From Magallana gigas (taxonomy: Eukaryota), in the NCBI RefSeq assembly GCF_963853765.1, contig NC_088859.1, positions 25,792,001 to 25,856,000 on the forward strand: a DNA stretch of 64,000 nucleotides, given 5' to 3'. Shown in pieces: positions 4,877-49,545 of the stretch. The notes below the pieces were generated by a model. It saw only the letters and a program-made list of their open reading frames with translations. It was not told the origin of the DNA and made no database searches. A program made the translations under genes and the position numbers. How positions within the stretch are numbered: position 1 is the stretch's first letter; each line of letters opens with the position of its first letter.

Positions 4877-7800
4877 GGGGTGGCAGGCAGAGTTTGCTTT
4901 TCTTCTGAAATTATAAAATGATTATGATGGTTTAGAAAAGGACGGGTCCTGAAATATTCATAAGGAAACTCTTTTTATTGAAATCAAATCCCCATAATGT
5001 GTGTCCTTTTAAATCTATTTCACTTATATATTAGAAAAATTGCACTTTCATTGCGGCATCCACGATTTTTCATTGGCGTCATTATGAAGAATCCTCGACA
5101 TTCAATGCAGTTTAAGCTATGGGGTTAAACCTATATAATACCATTTACCGACTGAATGAATTTGTAATGGTTATGTTCACATTAGTAATAGTTTTCTGAT
5201 AAAAGCCCATGTACAAACACCATAAAGTAAAACTCTCTATCTCTTTACATTAAATGCAAATTATTCGACGCTAAAAAGGAAGTTAATAGAATCCACTACA
5301 ATTATAGAATTTTTGATTTCTATATATCGTAAACTTTTCAATGGCGTGCATTAAATCAGGAAAGAATTATTAAGATCAAGACATATCTTCATTATACTGA
5401 GTACACATTCAATTTGTTTTTTAACATATGTTCCGCAGACATTTAAAAACACGGAGATTGAAGGCAGACAGTAGATCATACATGAAATACTAGTAGATGA
5501 TTTAAAGGTACTCTAAGATCTAGATCAAAACCCGTGTCTTACGTAAATATCTTCAACACCACCCATCCCCCCATAACTTTTTTGCTTGATAGTTTATCTT
5601 TATTACAGAAACAGGAGGGAGTGAGATAACTAGATTGTTATCGTAGAATCGATTTTTTCCCTAAAAAATTTAAAACCAAATATCATTCAGAAATAATTGA
5701 ATCTTTTTCTCTTTTCTTGACCGTCACATTCTTAAACGACAGGATCTTAAATAAGAAAATCAAAGATCACGGAAATAACATAAAAGCAGAACAAGTGTTT
5801 GATAGATTTTCCAAATGCCATAAAATGACATAATTTGCCCAGATAACGACATCAAAGTTCACCTTTTGACGAGATTTTTGCCGGAGACCAAGCTGTGCAT
5901 ATTTAAAGGGGGAACAGGCCTATGCAGGTTGGACCACTCGAGGCGAAATCCGATTCAAACCCGTGTAAAGTATCACGGTACTCTTCCTTATTACATGGCA
6001 TGTGTCGTTTACAAAAACGCACGGATGATTATTTCATTTAATGACTCCGAAATCTGTTTTTGGCAAAATATGGAATGTGTCGTTCTTACATACTTGAATA
6101 AGATTGGTGTGTTGTAAAAGGAAAGCACTTAAGAAAAACCCTGTAATTAAGACATTTGAGATAAATTTCGGTGTCAGGGGGTGGTAGATAAAATATACCG
6201 GAATAAATGTAAACCACATTGGGGGGTACTAGTGTAGACACAATGATTGGCACAGAAAAAAACACGAGGAAAGGCTGTCCTTTTAATCAATGTAATACGA
6301 TACCCTAAGATTGGCTTTCATTTAACTGAAGCAGTTGCTATATATTTCAACTAGGTGCAAGCAAAAGTTTTTGAATTGATCTAACTAATGCTTCCTGTTT
6401 CGAAGACGAATCTTTTTTTTATCCAACCATTATCGTATTTGTTCCTATTCTCGCCTGGCTGGGTGTACAAATACTTTCTACATGCAACATTCATACGGTA
6501 CATTTTAAAGGCACGCTCCGATTGTTGTCCAAACATTCCATGTTTTCTTTTCAAATGAGCATTTGAGAGACATCCAATACTTAAAGTTATTCTACTTTTG
6601 TAGGACATGGTCACCTGTTGGATATGACTAATTCAATCATATCAGATGAATCTAATTTTTCGCTTTTTGATAAGTGAAAAGGGGGTAATTTATCACGTCA
6701 AGAATCCCAGAATCCCTAGAGATTAATCACTAAATTTTGTGACACGAGAAAGTAAATCCCCAAAGAAGAACCCTAAGATGTGGACAAAAGGGTAGAAAGT
6801 CCCGAAAAGAAGAAACACGTATATCCAGGTAAGTGGTCGGGTAAAATACTTACACAGGTGTAATTAAATAGTGAGGGTTTACTTTTACCCACTTAGACTA
6901 GAACTCAAGAGGACAGGAGATCCCATCGTTCCTCCCCCAAGGCTACCTTTCAACCACCTTACCAACATATCCTCCCCCGAACAACAAAATTCCATGCAAT
7001 ACTCATAATACAAATGTACAGCTATTAATAGAATCGATATTGCAACGATATAATGCCGTGTTACGATGGACAGAGAATCTTTTGGGGACATTCCAGAAAC
7101 CCTGGAAGTTTCCATTTCTTATACAGAATTGTCGATTACGGATGCCTATTTCGAGGAGATCGCAATTCGGTATCGTGCAGAAACAGATGGTGGTCCTGAT
7201 CATCTAGCAGTCTGATACCCTTATAACTTTATCGAAAAAAAAAATTATGCATCCATAAAATTTTGTCATTAAATGTCTTTTGTCAATAAAGCCGACATTA
7301 AATCTAAACATGATTACAAGTTCATGAATAAATGACACTTAAAAGTTTTTTTTATAATGAAAAAAATTGGTTATTGAAGTTTTGTAATGGGAATCAAGTT
7401 GTTTAGTTTAATTGACAAACGCGTTAACAACCAAGTAAGGGCAACCGTGTTCAATATAAGCGTTGCCAATAAACAGGTTGTTAAACATATGGTATAGGTT
7501 TATGACGATAGTTTTGCCGTGTTACGTTACTGTTTATAGAGAAAAGTCATCGACGGGTCAGTTGTGGACGACTGCTGAAATCATCCCGGTTTAAATAAAA
7601 TAGACAAAAGCCGCTACATATTGTAAGTTTATGAAGATAATTTTGCCGTACTTCGTTACTGTCCGTTGCATGAGAAAGAAAATCATCTTTGGATGAATCC
7701 ATCTGCATATCTTAAATAATTAAATGTCGAAGAAAAGCAGCTATATGAATTGGGCGCCTGCTAAAAGTCCCAGACCAAACTTAAAAGTCACCAGCTAGAA

Positions 7801-10800
7801 ATATCTATGTTGTATGATGATAAAAACGTTTGTAGGTATGTTCAGAAAGATAATTGCGTTGTGCGTGAAAAGTGAATGTCAACAGTGAATAGATGATTAG
7901 AAAGGAATCTAATTTCATGTAAGATTATCTCTCATGGTAAATAGCAAAACGTTCTCAAATACCATTCACCATCTTTGCCATTTACTCAAGAGAGCATTTT
8001 TTTTTACCGATATGGAATAACTAGACTGACCCCGAAAGACTTGAGTAAAGCGAAAACTTAGACAGGAAGTGACGTTCTGGTTCTCATATCTTAACATACA
8101 AACTTTTATTGAGAATACATTGAACATACAACTATCGTCTGAGATTAATTGCTCTCATAATCAAAGCGAGTAATGAAAATTGGGAGATCATATTGTGAGA
8201 TGAAAAAAAAAGTTAAAATTCAATTAATTTTCAATTGGCATTTCTGAACACCTCTGAGATTTTCATGCGCAATTGAACTTTATGTTTTGCAAAATCCTTT
8301 GTATTGGTCCTTTTTTATTCTAAATGATATTAGGATTCAAGTGTGTATCATGTTTTCTTAAAAAGCAGATTACGATCTATATTTCAACACTGTTAGTAGG
8401 TCGGTGCCCCCAGAAGCATAGGTGAGTCTTTTAATCGCTAATCCCCAACATTGAAAACGCAAAACACAGAATGATTTGCCATTCAACGAGACCTTAAGCG
8501 AATCTGTGCGTTCTTCAGATGCGCTGCTTTGTTTTTACACTTTGATGACATTTATTATAAATAATTCTCTTTATGACGACCATCAAGTTTTACCTGCAAG
8601 AAATGGTTAAACGAATAAAGGATTTATGCAACCCCCAAGCGTCATTTTCTATGCATTAACTTCTACGTTATGCATCCAATTCTTGTAAATTGCTTTTTAT
8701 TTCAAGCTTTTTTAATAATTTAGTATGGGAATCGTTTTCTTTGACGGCTTAGATAAAGAATTTAAAATATGTAAGGCATATCAAATGATGACGAATATAA
8801 AAATCAAGATATTGATCAATCTCTCTATTTTTGGTCTCTCTCTTCTGACATTCGGAATTTCTTTGTAAAAAAAAAAAAGTGTTGAATTATGCAACCTTCA
8901 TCCACAAGCGTCAACGCAGCCATTTGCAATTCACATGTCATACTCGAAGAGAAATTTATTAGTCCGATTATTGTGACTTTCCTAAGTCAGGGAATACCTA
9001 ACCAGAAGTGGAATAACCTGCACGACCCATAAAAGTGCAGTAATACATGTACTTATGTAGTTGTGTACTTAACAGTCTTGCATGCCAAAAAACCTTATGC
9101 CTCGAAACAGTTAAAGAAACTATAAATTATGTACAATGTCTACACTCGTCCTGTTCTTCATTATAGGAAACGGGTCGTATTGCAAAATTTCACCATCGTT
9201 TCGCAAAACTGACAATATTATCTTTTGAATCTCCGAATCATGATCAGTTTATTAGTATTTCATTTAAATTCATTTTTGTTTTCTATCGATTTCATTCGTT
9301 AAATACTCGAACTGCCAATAGTACAGATGGATCGCGTTCTCCGAATTGAGCAAACACAATTGCACTATTTGCCTCCACAAAAGCTATAGATCCCCACACT
9401 ATTTTCCCAACATCTCTTATTGTTATGGCGAGATCTAGAATGAACCGAATTATACACATCACAATGGCACTGATAATATATTTTCTGATGTGCTCAATTT
9501 ACCAAAGAGCACTTCTAGTTGTGAATAAATTTTATTCTTTGAAACGCAACAAAAAATGCAACAAAAGTGCACAATCACTGTTAAACTGAAAAGACGAACA
9601 ACTTCAGCGGACCACTACAACATAGTGCAAATGTACCTCACAAGGTTAACTAGATTCAAAACGTCATGGGTGTAAAGACGGGGGTCTAAGAAATTAAAGC
9701 TTCACGCCAAAGAATGCCGGTAGATTTCATGTCTTCTACTCGCTGGATGTCTCTAAAAGTGCGTTTGGATTACAGGTGGAAGACAACTACCTTTCTGACC
9801 CGACATTTATTCTCTACTCACCTTGCTTTGCGACAACCATGTGCGTCACTGAGATGTTGTTTTATAACGTCTAATCGATACTTTACGGGTAAAAATTGTC
9901 CACCTGGAGGTATCTATATATCAATGTATTACCTCTAATTTAAACCAAAGGCAGGACTCTACTAAAGCCGGTACACCTATCGGCCTTCAGAACTGGATGT
10001 CATCTGCTAATTTCATAAATCTTAAATCCAAAAACAAGTACAAGATCGACCGAAATTAGTTTTTCATGCTAAGGAAGACTTTTAAAAGAAACTTTTGTAT
10101 GCGGAGTTATATATTTATTGTTTTTTAGATCAAAAAATATATCCACACATGTACCTTCAATGCAAATCAGGTGATAGACAACAAGAATTAACCTGATCTA
10201 CTTTTGAAACTAACTTTCTTAGACGATGCACCTTGGATGTACTTTTGGTATGGGAGGGGTTTAAAAGTAAAAAACAAAAAAAAAAGACCAAGCTTTATAG
10301 CCCACTAAGATCATAGCAATTGATGGTCTGTTTCAGAGCATCAATAAATGTCTTTTATAGTAGGTGTTCCTTCCTACTCAACGAAAAACTAATTTGCTCT
10401 CAGAAAGTCGCACTACAGTGTTATATCATTGCCTGTGTAGCCGCTGATGATTATTAAATGTATGTTACGCATTGATAAGTAAACTGTATAAAATGTATGT
10501 GTCTCTTCCTTTCTGGACAAATCGCATTATTCAAAAAGTCATGATCACAAAAAAATGCTTGTAATAGAAAACACTAAACCAGCCAGTAATCATATAGAAT
10601 CGGAACAAAAAAGTGGGCTACTTATTAAATATGCTTCATTGAACTGCCAATAATGTATCGTAATTGTACAGTATTTACACAGGCTTTATTATTATTAAAA
10701 AATAATATTTGACTACGGCTTGTTTAGCAATCTCATTACTGGAGCTCGGGGACAAAGTCACACGTGCAAGGAATGGCTAGAAATGTTTTTAGTTTTCGAT

Positions 10801-46884: not shown

Positions 46885-47053
46885 TAAATATAAGTAATAA
46901 ACAGCAATGTTAAAAAGTTCACCGGGATATGATGTTGGTTGGTACGTGATCAAACCTACTGAGAAGCCCTACGGGCTTCACAGGATTTGATCACGTGACC
47001 AACCAACTTCATATCCCGGTGAACTTTTTAAATTGCTGTTTATTTCTTAAACA
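46885..47053. mobile_element. Fold-back palindromic element P3
   Basis: Arms TAAGTAATAAACAGCAAT...GTGATCAAA around GAAGCCC-TAC-GGGCTTC. The ends are TAAATA and TAAACA. Confidence 0.8.
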
Positions 47054-47453
47054 ACCACGGAAGAAACGTGTACCTTTTTATAATAATTCTTTATATGTGA
47101 ATCAGTAACACCCAATTCATGTACTCTAAATAGAAAAAAAAAATAAAAATGTTGGAGACGGTTTTATTTACCTGGTATAACCGGTATGACAAGGCGTAGT
47201 TACAAACAATGACATACATATATATAATCTATAATAAACATTTTTTGACTTCAGGAAACATGTTGTGGTTATTTACAAGTATATAGAAAGGTCCATGGAA
47301 ACCAAACATTTCAATGGAAAAAAATAATATTATTTTTAGGTAAAAGAGAGCTCGGGTATCCACTTTTAATAAAACGTTTTAATTTCCACATAAATGCACA
47401 GTAAATGCATTAATTGCTATTGAACAGATTGATCAATTGTTGTTCTTGTTTGT

Positions 47454-48779
47454 TCAATCTTTCGGAGGAGTGATTTCATTGCCATCTCTGGACCGGGCTG
47501 TCATTGGTCTCTGGGCAGACAGCTTCTTTTGCTGTATGATACGCTCTCTTCGAATTTTTGCTTTCTCATGTTTATCCACCAACAGCTTGTCTCTTTCCTC
47601 TTAAAAAACAATCCATATTATATAATTATAATTAGTTCATCTTTTTCTCCATTTATAGTAGGGAATTGTGTATTATTGCTAGCGCTCTCGAGCGCTAGCA
47701 ACTACGTTAGTCCTTTTCACTGGAATACGCATGCTCGACTCCATAGTAGGGGATTCTGGGAATACTGTACTACTGTAGATAAACTGTACCATTTGAATTT
47801 CGTTTTATCATCTTCAAGTGAAGTTCTGTGTTTTATCGTTAATGTCAAAAAGTAACAGTAGCGTCGGTCTTATAAAGCAAAGTTATTTTCAATATTATAA
47901 TAAATAACATGTAGCTATAGCTTTATCTTAAATTCCTTCAAGCTCGGAAGACAACTTCGGATATGTTTTTCGAGCTTGCCGGAAAGGCCCGAGAAGATAC
48001 GATTGCTACAAAACAGTACCAATGGTTCCTGAAAAATTTCACCTCGAAATTGAAATTACAGTAGATACATAATGATTAAGGCACAGTAAATGAGCTATGC
48101 CATTGCCGATGTGAAGCCCACTCTAAATTCACAATTTTAAATTGCATGAGACCCCACTCCAGCACAATTCCAGTACACCACTGTGCCTTCCTATTGTTAA
48201 TTAATCGATTCAGAAATTTAAACCAATGTTTTAGAAATCTGCTTCTGGGTTTTATGATTGCTACAGCGCTAGCTCACCAATCTTTTTTAAAAGATAAGCT
48301 TGTAAATAATAATATTTTAATGTAAATTAATAGTAAAATATACCATCAAAAACAGTAACCCAGGATTTCTAATTTCAGAAAATACGATAACATATTATTG
48401 TTAGCATCTAAACACCCACCTTTCCATTTCTTATATTCCTCGTCCCCAGCTGTAAGAGCTGAATTCAGCCGAACTCTCTTAGCGTTGATTGGAGGAAGCT
48501 TGGGTACACTTGACTTGTACTCTATATTAAAAGCCACGCCTCCGCTCTTCTGTACGACCTCTGACAATGTACTATACGGAGGGCCCCATCAACTTGAGGT
48601 TTGTTGGTATTGGGCTCTGTACAGAACATCATCCACGGCAATGGCTTTGTCTGGATGTTATCTTCCATCAGCTCTATCTTTATTTCCTCTTCCATCTTAC
48701 TGTGGGCCTCCGCCTCTTCCTCCGACATAACATCAACTTTGTTGCTTCTCTTGCCGATACAACTCTGGATAAGACCCAT
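47454..48779 (-). pseudogene. Inverted paralog (copy B) of the stathmin-domain-like gene, with one frameshift in exon 1
   Basis: Exons 48779-48420 and 47599-47454, with the same phase-1 intron position as copy A. Between the shared D and E codons near 48560-48590, copy A has 24 nt and copy B has 26 nt. The frame-0 ORF therefore stops at 48522, while the homologous C-terminal sequence (EVVQKSGGVAFNIEYKSSVPKLPP...EERDKLLVDKHEKAKIRRER) continues intact in another frame. This may be a consensus indel error rather than a true pseudogene. Confidence 0.65.
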
Positions 48780-48933
48780 TTTGTTCTATCTTGCCTGACA
48801 ACTATATAGTGACGTCATTTATCTGTGACGTTGAATCGTCACAAAGGAATGACATCACTATGCCGTGACATAATTATTATTCCATAACAATACGCATTGT
48901 TTTCAAGTTGTCAGGCTTGCAATCAACAGCAAA
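48780..48933. promoter_or_regulatory. 154-bp divergent promoter and 5'UTR region between the paralog ATGs, rich in CRE-like sites
   Basis: Full palindromic TGACGTCA at 48810-48817, TGACGT at 48826-48831, a reverse TGACG half-site at 48837-48841, and TGACATCA at 48850-48857. Confidence 0.6.
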
Positions 48934-49545
48934 ATGGGTCTTATCCAGAGTTGTATTGGTAAGAGAAGCAACAAAGTCGATGTCATGTCAGAAGAGGAGG
49001 CGGAGGCCTACAGTAAGATGGAAGAGGAGATAAAGAAGGAACTAGTGGATGATAACATCCAGACCAAGCCCCTACCATGGATGATGTTTTGTACAGAGCC
49101 TATTGTCCCAAAACCTTTTACTGATGAGGTCCCCGGGAGCCCAGTTTTGGAAGTTGTGCAAAAGAAAGGAGGCGTTGCCTTCGATATCGGGTACAAGTCA
49201 ACTGTACCCAAGCTTCCTCCAATCAACGCTAAAAGGGTTCAGGTTCCAGCTGGGGGCGAGGACTACGAGAAATGGAAAGGTATGTATTATATAAACAGAT
49301 ACAATAATCATCAGTTTCAATTTAGAAGGTACATGATCTGTCAGTCAAATTACTAGTATCGACACTTAACCAATATATTTGTGTGTGTGTTTGTTTTAGC
49401 TGAAAGAGACAAACTTCTGGTCGATAAGCACGAGAAAGCAAAGATTCGAAGAGAACGTATCACCCAGGAAAAGAAGCTGTCTGCCCAGAGACCAAGGACA
49501 GCCCGGTCCAGAGATGCCATTGAAAGCACTCCTTCGAAAGATTGA
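48934..49545 (+). CDS. Small putatively N-acylated stathmin-domain-like protein (STMND1/CCDC198-like), copy A, 2 exons, 163 aa
   Basis: Exons 48934-49279 and 49400-49545, with a phase-1 intron (AAAG|gtatgt ... ttttag|CT). The protein begins MGLIQSCIGKRSNKV (Gly2, Cys7, basic residues). It then has GGVAFDI...PKLPP and a charged helix (KWKAERDKLLVDKHEKAKIRRERITQEKK), the layout of stathmin-like domains. The family call is by motif resemblance only. Confidence 0.85.

What the first reader, a model, noticed from the sequence alone, without database searches (positions are those of the whole stretch)
47454..49545. Divergent inverted pair of stathmin-domain-like genes with ATGs 154 bp apart
Two 2-exon paralogs point away from each other across a spacer too short for independent promoters. 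In the first 56 codons I count about 16 synonymous and 4 non-synonymous differences, so both copies were under purifying selection long after duplication. The region just after MFCTEP has diverged sharply (IVPKPFTDEVPGSPVL vs NTNKPQVDGALRIV..), which may mark subfunctionalisation or loss of an SP phosphosite. An MG..C N-terminus plus an AFDI-PP-helix module predicts a membrane-anchored tubulin binder like STMND1/CCDC198. A co-regulated, cAMP-responsive pair of this kind is not something I recognise as described.
Basis: partly seen in the sequence, partly recalled or inferred. Interest (0 to 1): 0.7.

Follow-up and report, generated by a model that had tools for sequence, protein, structure and literature searches.

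The report
Head-to-head oyster mini-stathmin-like gene pair
Two small Pacific-oyster genes sit back to back across a 154-bp promoter with mirrored cAMP-response elements; the pair is real, old, transcribed on both sides and one of six such pairs in the genome, but any kinship to the tubulin-binding stathmins rests on one short motif.

Summary
The window is Magallana (Crassostrea) gigas chromosome DNA.

One thing was missed. As assembled, the minus copy carries a 2-bp TA insertion at 48573-48574 that shifts the frame, so part of the "sharp divergence" is a misread frame. Three other datasets (one RNA, two DNA) lack the TA. Without it the copy encodes a 167-aa protein, 163/167 identical to XP_011412265.

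Spliced RNA contigs exist for both copies, and independent DNA contigs bridge the junction.

The pair is one of six head-to-head pairs on five chromosomes. C. virginica also has such pairs; two Saccostrea loci are singletons. AU tests show the A|B pair predates its spread. The spacer core, two mirrored CREs, is conserved family-wide.

The protein family was found only in oysters. It has an invariant MG…S-C acylation motif and is mostly disordered. Pfam and PDB profile searches give no stathmin hit. Only a GGxxFxI…PKLPP motif aligns with mollusc STMND1 (hhalign P about 1e-4). Tubulin binding is unproven.

I rate this a new variant of known kinds, of moderate interest.

The parts
48934..49279 (+). 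Plus copy (type A), exon 1: 115 codons plus 1 nt. Holds the MGLIQSC acylation motif, helix 20-38, a disordered linker and the GGVAFDI...PKLPP motif.
   Evidence: (P0001, 100% identical)
49280..49399 (+). Plus copy intron, 120 nt, GT..AG.
   Evidence: An RNA contig joint skips 120 nt here in X15 (table 5).
49400..49545 (+). Plus copy exon 2: a basic helix (ERDKLLVDKHEKAKIRRER...), then the stop codon.
   Evidence: helix 109-144, pLDDT about 90
48420..48779 (-). Minus copy (type B), exon 1. It is 360 nt in this assembly, 2 nt too long for the frame.
   Evidence: The RNA contig X15 record 10 covers 48420-48714.
48573..48574 (-). Extra TA (within TATA 48573-48576) that shifts the frame of the minus copy. 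It is seen only in this assembly or haplotype.
   Evidence: table 4: 'left out 2' at 48573 at full depth in X15 (RNA), X2 and X13 (DNA); without it the ORF is 167 aa, 163/167 identical to P0126 (XP_011412265.1).
47600..48419 (-). Minus copy intron, 820 nt, GT..AG on the minus strand.
   Evidence: RNA contig joint 47599|48420, skips 820, depth 30.2.
47676..48302 (.). 627-bp high-copy non-autonomous repeat inserted in the minus intron. It is polymorphic: absent in two other samples.
   Evidence: the joint 47675|48303 occurs in X2 and X13 DNA contigs, and depth over the element is in the thousands; 858 first-look candidates, 40 scored, with many full-length 1-627 copies at 88-97% identity.
47454..47599 (-). 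Minus copy exon 2 with its stop codon.
48780..48933 (.). 154-bp spacer between the start codons. It consists of two mirrored proximal promoters.
48810..48817 (.). Perfect CRE, TGACGTCA, in an AGTGACGTCAT core that is invariant across seven spacers.
48850..48857 (.). Mirror CRE. Here it reads TGACATCA, one mismatch; it is perfect in five of the other six aligned spacers (C6b, C2, C9 and both C. virginica pairs) and TGACATCA at C6a too.
48826..48841 (.). Inner palindrome with CRE half-sites (TGACG ... CGTCA), at the centre of symmetry near 48833.
47427..49572 (.). Full extent of the inverted duplication. The arms end about 27 bp past each stop codon.
   Evidence: I1, I2, I3, I5

Best explanation
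This is a genuine, ancient inverted duplication of a small 2-exon gene in the Pacific oyster.

Shown:
- Each arm kept its own proximal promoter, about 50-100 bp long and built around a palindromic CRE (TGACGTCA). The two start codons therefore face away from each other across a 154-bp mirrored promoter.
- Both copies are transcribed and correctly spliced.
- The pair consists of a type-A and a type-B paralog. It formed before it was copied as a unit to at least three chromosomes. The genome now holds six such pairs, and in the reference usually only one arm of each stays intact.
- In the reference haplotype the minus (B) copy of this locus is a null allele, or less likely an assembly slip. It has a 2-bp TA insertion plus a 627-bp transposon in its intron. 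Other oysters carry and express an intact 167-aa form.

Inferred:
- The proteins (163-167 aa) belong to a family that these searches found only in oysters. They have an N-myristoylation/palmitoylation-type MG-x3-S-C start, so they are probably membrane-tethered.
- They are mostly disordered, with one acidic and one basic helix.
- They carry a GG-phi-x-F-x-phi ... PK-L-PP motif that resembles the tubulin-capping hairpin and proline stretch at the start of the stathmin-like domain of STMND1.
- They probably descend from, or mimic, the N-terminal part of a membrane-anchored stathmin.
- They might bind one tubulin end or subunit rather than sequester two dimers.
- CREB/ATF-type factors probably drive both genes together.
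For: Structure and reality of the pair. Independent DNA contigs bridge the junction (records 5 and 20).

Transcription: spliced RNA contigs support both arms in X15, with joints 47599|48420 and about 49278|49400.

Selection: dN/dS is 0.027 in codons 1-56 and 0.19 overall.

Private frameshift: the TA is absent in 3 of 3 other datasets, and intact protein models from an earlier assembly exist (P0126 and P0026).

Family of pairs:
- Six head-to-head loci in the genome.
- Two tandem pairs in C. virginica.
- Singletons at the two Saccostrea echinata loci examined.
- The type-A clade has 97/98 support.
- Within-locus sisterhood is rejected at C7, C6a and C9 (p-AU 0.006, 0.0003, 0.002).

Promoter: the CRE core is invariant across seven spacers. 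The same motif lies 60-80 bp upstream of the 120-aa subfamily genes and the Saccostrea genes.

Protein:
- G2 and C7 are at least 90% conserved.
- The AF2 model is disordered, with helices 20-38 and 109-144.
- hhalign against mollusc STMND1 gives P=1e-4 and 8e-4 on the hairpin/PP motif. Column-shuffled controls reach at most 16 and the reversed control 23, against real scores of 35 and 31.
- ESM Atlas neighbours of two members that are 31% identical are Stathmin/DUF4619-labelled clusters at 0.92-0.93.
- STMND1 is known to be N-myristoylated and palmitoylated, to bind tubulin and to localise to cilia (PMC11238091).
Against: There is no Pfam Stathmin or DUF4619 hit at E<=10 for any member. Family profiles give no stathmin/RB3 hit in PDB, although the control works.

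The hhalign match covers only 27-57 columns, with probability 25-58%. The reversed control already scores 23, so composition contributes.

The single C-terminal helix is about 36 residues. That is far shorter than a stathmin-like domain, so two-dimer sequestration is impossible.

Tubulin binding, acylation and CREB dependence were not tested.

In five of six pairs one arm is damaged in the reference, so co-function of the two arms is not required.

No tissue or condition of expression is known. Co-expression rests on one RNA run.
Confidence: 0.6

Rival explanations
1. The proteins are an oyster-specific orphan family unrelated to stathmins. On this view the GGxxFxI...PKLPP resemblance and the MG..C start are chance or convergence. 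The function would be something else at a membrane, for example an adaptor or a regulator with a basic helix.
For: All HMM tests against Stathmin and DUF4619 are negative. HMMER found only 44 relatives among 1.84 billion representatives, and every named one comes from an oyster. hhalign probability is only 25-58%, and the reversed control reaches a score of 23. The oyster already has a bona fide STMND1 and a stathmin elsewhere in the genome.
Against: The a-priori chosen target aligns exactly at the expected motif with P about 1e-4, well above shuffled controls. Two diverged members independently land on Stathmin/DUF4619-labelled clusters. The N-terminal acylation logic is the same as in STMND1.
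Confidence: 0.33
2. Functionally this is a single gene with a decaying mirror copy. On this view the minus copy is a pseudogene and the pairing has no present role.
For: The minus copy is frameshifted in this assembly and carries a transposon in its intron. At the other five loci one arm is broken, decayed or has lost its G2.
Against: The frameshift is absent in 3 of 3 other datasets, and the spliced mRNA contig carries the intact frame at a depth similar to the plus copy. An intact 167-aa model exists in an earlier assembly. dN/dS between the arms is 0.19.
Confidence: 0.15
3. The palindromic pair is cargo of, or itself behaves as, a mobile element of the foldback, Helitron or Pack type. That would explain how it reached six loci.
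For: The homology shared between loci is confined to a unit of about 1.5 kb that ends 30-100 bp past each stop codon, inside the 3' UTR. Introns are retained, so the copying was at the DNA level.
Against: I saw no terminal motifs, target-site duplications or shared flanking element at the unit's ends. Copies are few and old, at 75-90% identity. C2 and C6b share 3.9 kb at 96% identity, which is an ordinary segmental duplication.
Confidence: 0.07
4. The inverted pair is an assembly artefact, a false palindrome.
For: None beyond the general risk that palindromes carry in long-read assemblies.
Against: The arms differ by about 19%, with dS near 0.6-1.2. Contigs from two other samples span the junction with no differences. 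The same architecture is seen in C. virginica.
Confidence: 0.01

Closest known systems
STMND1 (stathmin domain containing 1), the ancient membrane-anchored stathmin clade (Deng et al. 2024, PMC11238091)
   Same: Both have an N-terminal glycine-2 plus nearby cysteine acylation motif. Both are intrinsically disordered. The GG-phi-x-F-x-phi ... (K/R)-x-PP motif aligns with the start of the stathmin-like domain of mollusc STMND1.
   Different: The oyster proteins are 163 aa against about 280-310 aa. They lack the long helix with the LTEEEI-x-EKLERAERRRK signature, give no PF00836 hit and have no NLS-like KRRKKKK stretch. The oyster has its own STMND1 orthologue at G000:C7:5274409, so these are not orthologues.
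Canonical stathmin / RB3 stathmin-like domain (PF00836; PDB 1SA0, 4I4T chain E)
   Same: There is a possible counterpart of the N-terminal capping hairpin, followed by a proline stretch and a helix.
   Different: No profile match was found. The helix is about 36 residues rather than about 90-100, so the T2S two-dimer complex cannot form.
CCDC198 / DUF4619 (PF15398)
   Same: Both are small to mid-size proteins with an MG start. ESM Atlas neighbours of the oyster proteins are auto-named 'DUF4619 domain-containing', and mollusc STMND1-like clusters carry both PF00836 and PF15398.
   Different: There is no PF15398 hit for any member, nor in the six-frame genome search, whose controls also stayed silent. 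The resemblance rests on language-model features only.
Head-to-head paralog pairs duplicated as units (COL4A1/2, 3/4, 5/6; histone H2A-H2B pairs)
   Same: In both, paralogs are transcribed divergently from a short shared promoter, and the pair is then copied as a unit to new loci (COL4A pairs as in bioRxiv 10.1101/2023.10.18.563013, seen).
   Different: Here the spacer is a near-perfect mirror of two CRE promoters. The unit is only about 1.5 kb. One arm usually decays after copying, which argues against an obligate A/B partnership.
Gene-bearing palindromes with arm-to-arm gene conversion (e.g. human Y-chromosome palindromes; from general knowledge)
   Same: In C. virginica the exon-1 arms are 92-97% identical within and between pairs. 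Both arms at C2 and C6b are type A. Both patterns fit episodic conversion.
   Different: The arms of this locus are 19% diverged, so there has been no recent conversion here. The palindrome is kilobase-scale, not hundreds of kilobases.

Membership tests
Stathmin family (Pfam PF00836) | A match to the family profile at or above the gathering score | tested here: not met
   No PF00836 hit at E<=10 for the exon pieces, five full-length proteins, 12 members of A3 and 26 members of A4. The oyster's true stathmin and STMND1 exons do hit.
Stathmin family (Pfam PF00836) | A long (about 90-100 residue) helix with two tubulin-binding repeats | tested here: not met
   The AF2 model has only helices 20-38 and 109-144. 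PDB profile searches with A2 and A4 find no RB3 or stathmin, whereas the STMND1 control A5 finds them at 1e-14.
Stathmin family (Pfam PF00836) | An N-terminal capping hairpin motif followed by a proline-rich stretch | tested here: inconclusive
   hhalign A4 vs A5 gives P=1e-4 and probability 57% over 27 columns. A3 vs A5 gives P=8e-4 over 57 columns. Shuffled controls reach at most 16 and the reversed control 23, against 35 and 31.
Stathmin family (Pfam PF00836) | Binds soluble tubulin | not testable with these tools
   No complete tubulin sequence could be handed to complex prediction; only partial tubulin exons were found.
STMND1 subfamily | An N-terminal dual-acylation motif (Gly2 myristoylation with a nearby Cys for palmitoylation) | tested here: met
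   By sequence only. The start is MGLIQSC, and G2 and C7 are at least 90% conserved in A3 and A4, with Ser at position 6 in nearly all members shown. The chemistry was not tested. STMND1 reference data come from PMC11238091.
STMND1 subfamily | Orthology to STMND1 with a full stathmin-like domain | tested here: not met
   A separate STMND1 orthologue lies at G000:C7:5274409, with 310-aa mollusc relatives that carry PF00836.
DUF4619 / CCDC198 (PF15398) | A match to the family profile | tested here: not met
   No hit at E<=10. The genome scan was silent, but so were its controls. Only ESM-feature neighbours carry the label.
Bidirectional-promoter gene pair | Head-to-head genes with starts less than 1 kb apart, both transcribed | tested here: met
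   The start codons are 154 bp apart. Spliced RNA contigs for both arms occur in the same run.
Bidirectional-promoter gene pair | A shared regulatory element that drives both genes | tested here: inconclusive
   The mirrored CRE core is conserved across seven spacers and across the wider family. However, each arm has its own CRE copy, and no functional or multi-tissue expression test was possible.

The most novel reading that the evidence does not exclude
The proteins are minimal 'cap-only' stathmins: membrane-tethered, disordered proteins that keep just the tubulin-capping hairpin and one short helix. They expanded in oysters to more than 30 gene copies, perhaps for the heavily ciliated gill and larval epithelia. 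The 1.5-kb A|B palindrome with its mirrored CRE promoter is itself the unit of copying, moved between chromosomes by a DNA-level mechanism that acts on the palindrome.
Probability: 0.12. Interest if true: 0.6.

Novelty: new variant of a known kind. Interest (0 to 1): 0.38.

Why it matters
If the motif homology is real, oysters carry a large, unannotated expansion of truncated, membrane-anchored stathmin-like proteins. It would comprise the six pairs described here plus at least 20 genes of a 120-aa subfamily. That would be a natural dissection of the stathmin-like domain into its capping part, useful for asking what the hairpin does on its own at a membrane or cilium.

Independently of function, the locus is a compact example of three things. 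First, a mirrored CRE promoter created by inverted duplication and then conserved for tens of millions of years. Second, a paralog pair copied as a unit, followed by repeated loss of one arm. Third, loss-of-function and transposon-insertion polymorphism inside the reference haplotype of a highly polymorphic species. Annotators who rely on the reference alone would call the minus copy a pseudogene, although it is expressed and intact in other animals.

Tried and rejected
- **Pfam scans.** Scans of the exon pieces, full-length proteins and 38 family members gave only noise, such as HMG_box_2, Nuf2 and phage scaffold at E>0.001.
- **PDB profile searches.** A2 and A4 gave only noise, such as glutaredoxin, NSD3 and CFAP77 at E>0.09.
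- **PF15398 genome scan.** Nothing was found, but its controls also stayed silent, so it is uninformative.
- **hhalign against single sequences.** The oyster STMND1 and stathmin exons gave only P about 0.01-0.02.
- **Fold search not run.** The AF2 model has mean pLDDT 62.9 and is mostly disordered, so structure matches would be meaningless.
- **Complex prediction with tubulin not run.** Only partial tubulin exons could be referenced and no eukaryotic reference is offered. An A/B heterodimer job was not sent because I do not claim binding.
- **Raw poly-A RNA reads.** Run X21 was sampled at 1 read in 100. It put reads only on the intronic transposon and none on the exons, so it says nothing on strand, ends or expression level.
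- **Literature searches.** Searches for the gene and protein identifiers, for CCDC198 together with stathmin, and for oyster head-to-head pairs found nothing relevant.
- **Earlier findings of this scan.** They held only this same stretch and unrelated notes.
- **Terminal motifs.** I looked for terminal motifs or target-site duplications at the ends of the duplicated unit and saw none.
- **Failed runs.** The first shuffling script timed out and one crashed before the working run. The look-up of sequencing runs failed three times before answering.
Full report
**1. What is in the sequence**

The window is Magallana (Crassostrea) gigas, G000:C7:25792001-25856000.

The plus strand carries a 2-exon gene:
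- exon 1 at 48934-49279;
- a GT..AG intron of 120 nt;
- exon 2 at 49400-49545.

Its 163-aa product is 100% identical to an NCBI 'uncharacterized protein' (P0001).

The minus strand carries a paralog that starts at 48779, exactly 154 bp from the plus start codon:
- exon 1 at 48779->48420;
- an 820-nt intron;
- exon 2 at 47599->47454.

The two arms form an inverted repeat of 81-84% identity. It ends about 27 bp beyond each stop codon, at 47427 and 49572.

In the first 56 codons, 16 differ synonymously and 4 non-synonymously (dN 0.033, dS 1.22).

**2.

As assembled, the minus copy is out of frame. Exon 1 is 360 nt where 358 are needed. An extra TA inside TATA (48573-48576) produces a stop after 85 codons, and the conserved GGVAFNI...PKLPP module continues in another frame.

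I laid public data on 47400-49600. The two letters at 48573 are left out at full depth in every other dataset that covers them:
- an RNA contig (X15, 30.2 of 30.2);
- DNA contigs from two further studies (X2, 12.7 of 12.7; X13, 22.3 of 22.3).

Without the TA the copy encodes 167 aa. That product is 163/167 identical to XP_011412265.1 (P0126) from an earlier assembly.

So the frameshift belongs to the reference haplotype, or less likely to its consensus.

The same haplotype also carries a 627-bp high-copy repeat in the intron (47676-48302). X2 and X13 lack it, as shown by the joint 47675|48303. The element has 858 first-look candidates in the genome, with many full-length copies at up to 97% identity.

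**3. Reality and transcription**

DNA contigs from X2 (48753-48977) and X13 (48775-48959) span both start codons without a difference, so the palindrome is not an assembly artefact.

In RNA run X15:
- One contig joins 47599 to 48420, skipping 820 nt with CT..AC ends, which is GT..AG on the minus strand. It carries the in-frame allele.
- Another contig skips the 120-nt plus intron.

Both copies are therefore transcribed and spliced, at similar depth (30 against 14-21).

This is one run only. Tissue, strand and transcript ends are unknown. The raw poly-A run, sampled at 1 read in 100, gave no exon reads.

**4. Selection**

With the in-frame form, whole-CDS dN/dS between the arms is 0.116/0.608 = 0.19.

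| Codons | dN/dS | Note |
|---|---|---|
| 1-56 | 0.027 | N-terminal part |

The SP site is found only in type-A copies.

I read the 57-75 stretch as a weakly constrained, disordered linker, not as evidence of subfunctionalisation.

**5. The pair is one of a family of pairs**

A six-frame search of the genome finds six head-to-head pairs on five chromosomes. Start-to-start spacers range from 136 to 631 bp.

| Locus | Right arm in the reference | Left arm in the reference |
|---|---|---|
| C7 (this window) | intact | private frameshift |
| C6a | intact | frameshift |
| C6b | intact | stops |
| C2 | intact | no start codon, frameshift |
| C9 | intact | G2S change and a decayed exon 2 |
| C3 | frameshift | heavily decayed |

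Intact protein models resembling the broken C6a left arm and C3 right arm exist from other assemblies (P0007, P0009).

An exon-1 tree gives a type-A clade with 97/98 support:
- C7-R, C6a-R and C9-L;
- both arms of C2 and C6b.

A looser type-B group holds C7-L, C6a-L, C9-R and C3-R.

Trees that force the two arms of one locus together are rejected at C7, C6a and C9 (p-AU 0.006, 0.0003, 0.002). One caveat applies: I named these groups after seeing the tree.

So an A|B pair existed before it was copied to these loci. Introns are retained, so the copying was at the DNA level.

Homology between loci is confined to about 1.5 kb and ends 30-100 bp after the stop codons. I saw no transposon termini there. 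C2 and C6b share 3.9 kb at 96% identity, which points to a recent segmental duplication.

Other oysters:
- C. virginica has two such pairs in tandem. Its exon-1 arms are 92-97% identical to each other, which means either concerted evolution or recent duplication.
- The two Saccostrea echinata loci examined are singletons.

**6. The spacer**

All spacers share a core of the form AGTGACGTCAT - N - TGTGACG...C(A/G)TCACA - N - ATGAC(G/A)TCAC.

This amounts to two CREs about 40 bp apart, in mirror orientation around an inner palindrome. The core is invariant or nearly so across five M. gigas loci and both C. virginica pairs.

In this window the left CRE is perfect (48810-48817) and the right one reads TGACATCA (48850-48857).

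The same TGACGTCA-containing motif lies 60-80 bp upstream of the start codon in the Saccostrea singletons. It also does so in tandem and head-to-head genes of the related 120-aa subfamily.

I therefore read the 'shared' promoter as two mirrored copies of the family's ancestral CRE promoter, joined back to back. Because the CRE is itself palindromic, co-regulation is plausible, but it was not tested.

**7. What the protein is**

HMMER over 1.84 billion representatives finds only 44 relatives. Every named hit comes from Ostreidae: Magallana, Crassostrea, Saccostrea and Ostrea.

There are two subfamilies:
- the 160-aa form described here;
- a 120-aa form with at least 20 copies in M. gigas.

Conserved features:
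- M1, G2 and C7, with Ser at position 6 in nearly all members shown, an N-myristoylation/palmitoylation-type start;
- an acidic helix;
- the motif KGG-phi-A-F-x-phi-x-phi...PK-L-PP;
- (E/D)-(Y/F)-E-K-W-K followed by a basic helix.

AF2 with the family alignment gives mean pLDDT 62.9. Only helices 20-38 and 109-144 are ordered.

**8. The stathmin test**

Negative by HMM:
- No PF00836 or PF15398 hit at E<=10 for any piece or member.
- No stathmin/RB3 hit in PDB profile searches.

The positive controls work:
- The oyster's own stathmin exon and STMND1-like exon hit PF00836.
- A profile of mollusc STMND1 proteins hits RB3 at about 1e-14.

Positive but weak:

| Comparison | P | Probability | Columns | Score |
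|---|---|---|---|---|
| 120-aa subfamily (A4) vs STMND1 profile (A5) | 1e-4 | 57% | 27 | 35 |
| 160-aa set (A3) vs STMND1 profile (A5) | 8e-4 | 25% | 57 | 31 |

- The first alignment falls exactly on the GGxxFxL...PKxPPxRL motif.
- Column-shuffled targets score 11 +/- 2, with a maximum of 16. The reversed target scores 23.
- ESM Atlas feature neighbours of P0001 and of P0089, which are 31% identical, are the same Stathmin/DUF4619-labelled clusters at 0.92-0.93.

STMND1 is experimentally N-myristoylated and palmitoylated, binds tubulin and sits in motile cilia (PMC11238091).

My reading is that the family probably (about 60%) derives from the N-terminal part of a membrane-anchored stathmin. It fails the family's defining tests, namely the profile match and the long two-repeat helix, so it should not be filed as a stathmin. 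Tubulin binding is an inference only.

**9. Verdict**

The frameshift in this very sequence was overlooked.

The locus is an ordinary kind of thing: a head-to-head paralog pair with a short bidirectional promoter, duplicated as a unit, like the COL4A or H2A-H2B pairs.

It comes in an unusual form:
- a 1.5-kb palindrome with a mirrored CRE promoter;
- six dispersed copies;
- repeated loss of one arm;
- an uncharacterised oyster family with a stathmin-hairpin-like motif.

I rate it a new variant of known kinds, of moderate interest.

Noticed in passing
window 47676-48302: A 627-bp non-autonomous repeat with discrete ends and a GCTAGCGCTC-GAGCGCTAGC hairpin near one end. It has 858 first-look candidates in the genome, with many full-length copies at 88-97% identity. 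It is absent from this site in two other samples, so the insertion is young and polymorphic.
   Followed up: partly
window 46910-47031: A short inverted repeat with 34-nt arms that are 97% complementary and 54 nt apart, nested in a 25-nt outer pair. It looks like a MITE or hairpin element just downstream of the minus copy.
   Followed up: no
window about 49828-50018; L014:4848-5039; L015:4857-5044: A repeat of about 190 bp lies downstream of the plus gene here. It also sits inside the spacers of the C6b and C2 pairs (84-85% identity), where it separates the dead left arms from the CRE core.
   Followed up: no
G000:C5:28968058-28970200, C4:29027407-29029090, C7:33211175-33211805, C7:38516133-38516734: The related 120-aa subfamily (MGLFQSC..., KGGVAFxLTF..PKMPPPRLLE) has at least 20 copies. 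Most lie in tandem arrays, but there are two more head-to-head pairs with spacers of 181 and 173 bp. All the promoters examined carry the same TGACGTCA motif.
   Followed up: partly
window 48420-48779 vs 48934-49279, and the two exons 2: dS between the arms is uneven: 1.22 in codons 1-56 against about 0.38 in codons 76-163. This may mean an old partial gene conversion of the 3' part, or it may be small-sample noise.
   Followed up: no
L018:3208-4629 and 6581-7890 (Crassostrea virginica): Two head-to-head pairs lie in tandem, 3.3 kb apart. The near-identity of the arms (92-97%) is confined to exon 1 and the spacer, which suggests conversion tracts rather than whole-unit duplication.
   Followed up: partly
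G000:C7:5274409-5274612 (L024); G000:C7:34349407-34350568 (L021); G000:C3:20193676-20193816 (L026): These are the oyster's bona fide STMND1-like gene, its canonical stathmin and a third stathmin-like exon that carries a stop codon. The first two lie on the same chromosome as the window.
   Followed up: partly
window 48804-48911: One DNA contig of run X13 (organism B) skips 106 bp of the spacer, including both CREs. The tool marks the sequence between as 'not known'. This may be a promoter deletion allele or a mis-join.
   Followed up: no
L015:3903-7820 vs L014:3909-7781: The chromosome 2 and chromosome 6 loci share 3.9 kb at 96% identity, including both arms. This is a recent inter-chromosomal segmental duplication.
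   Followed up: no
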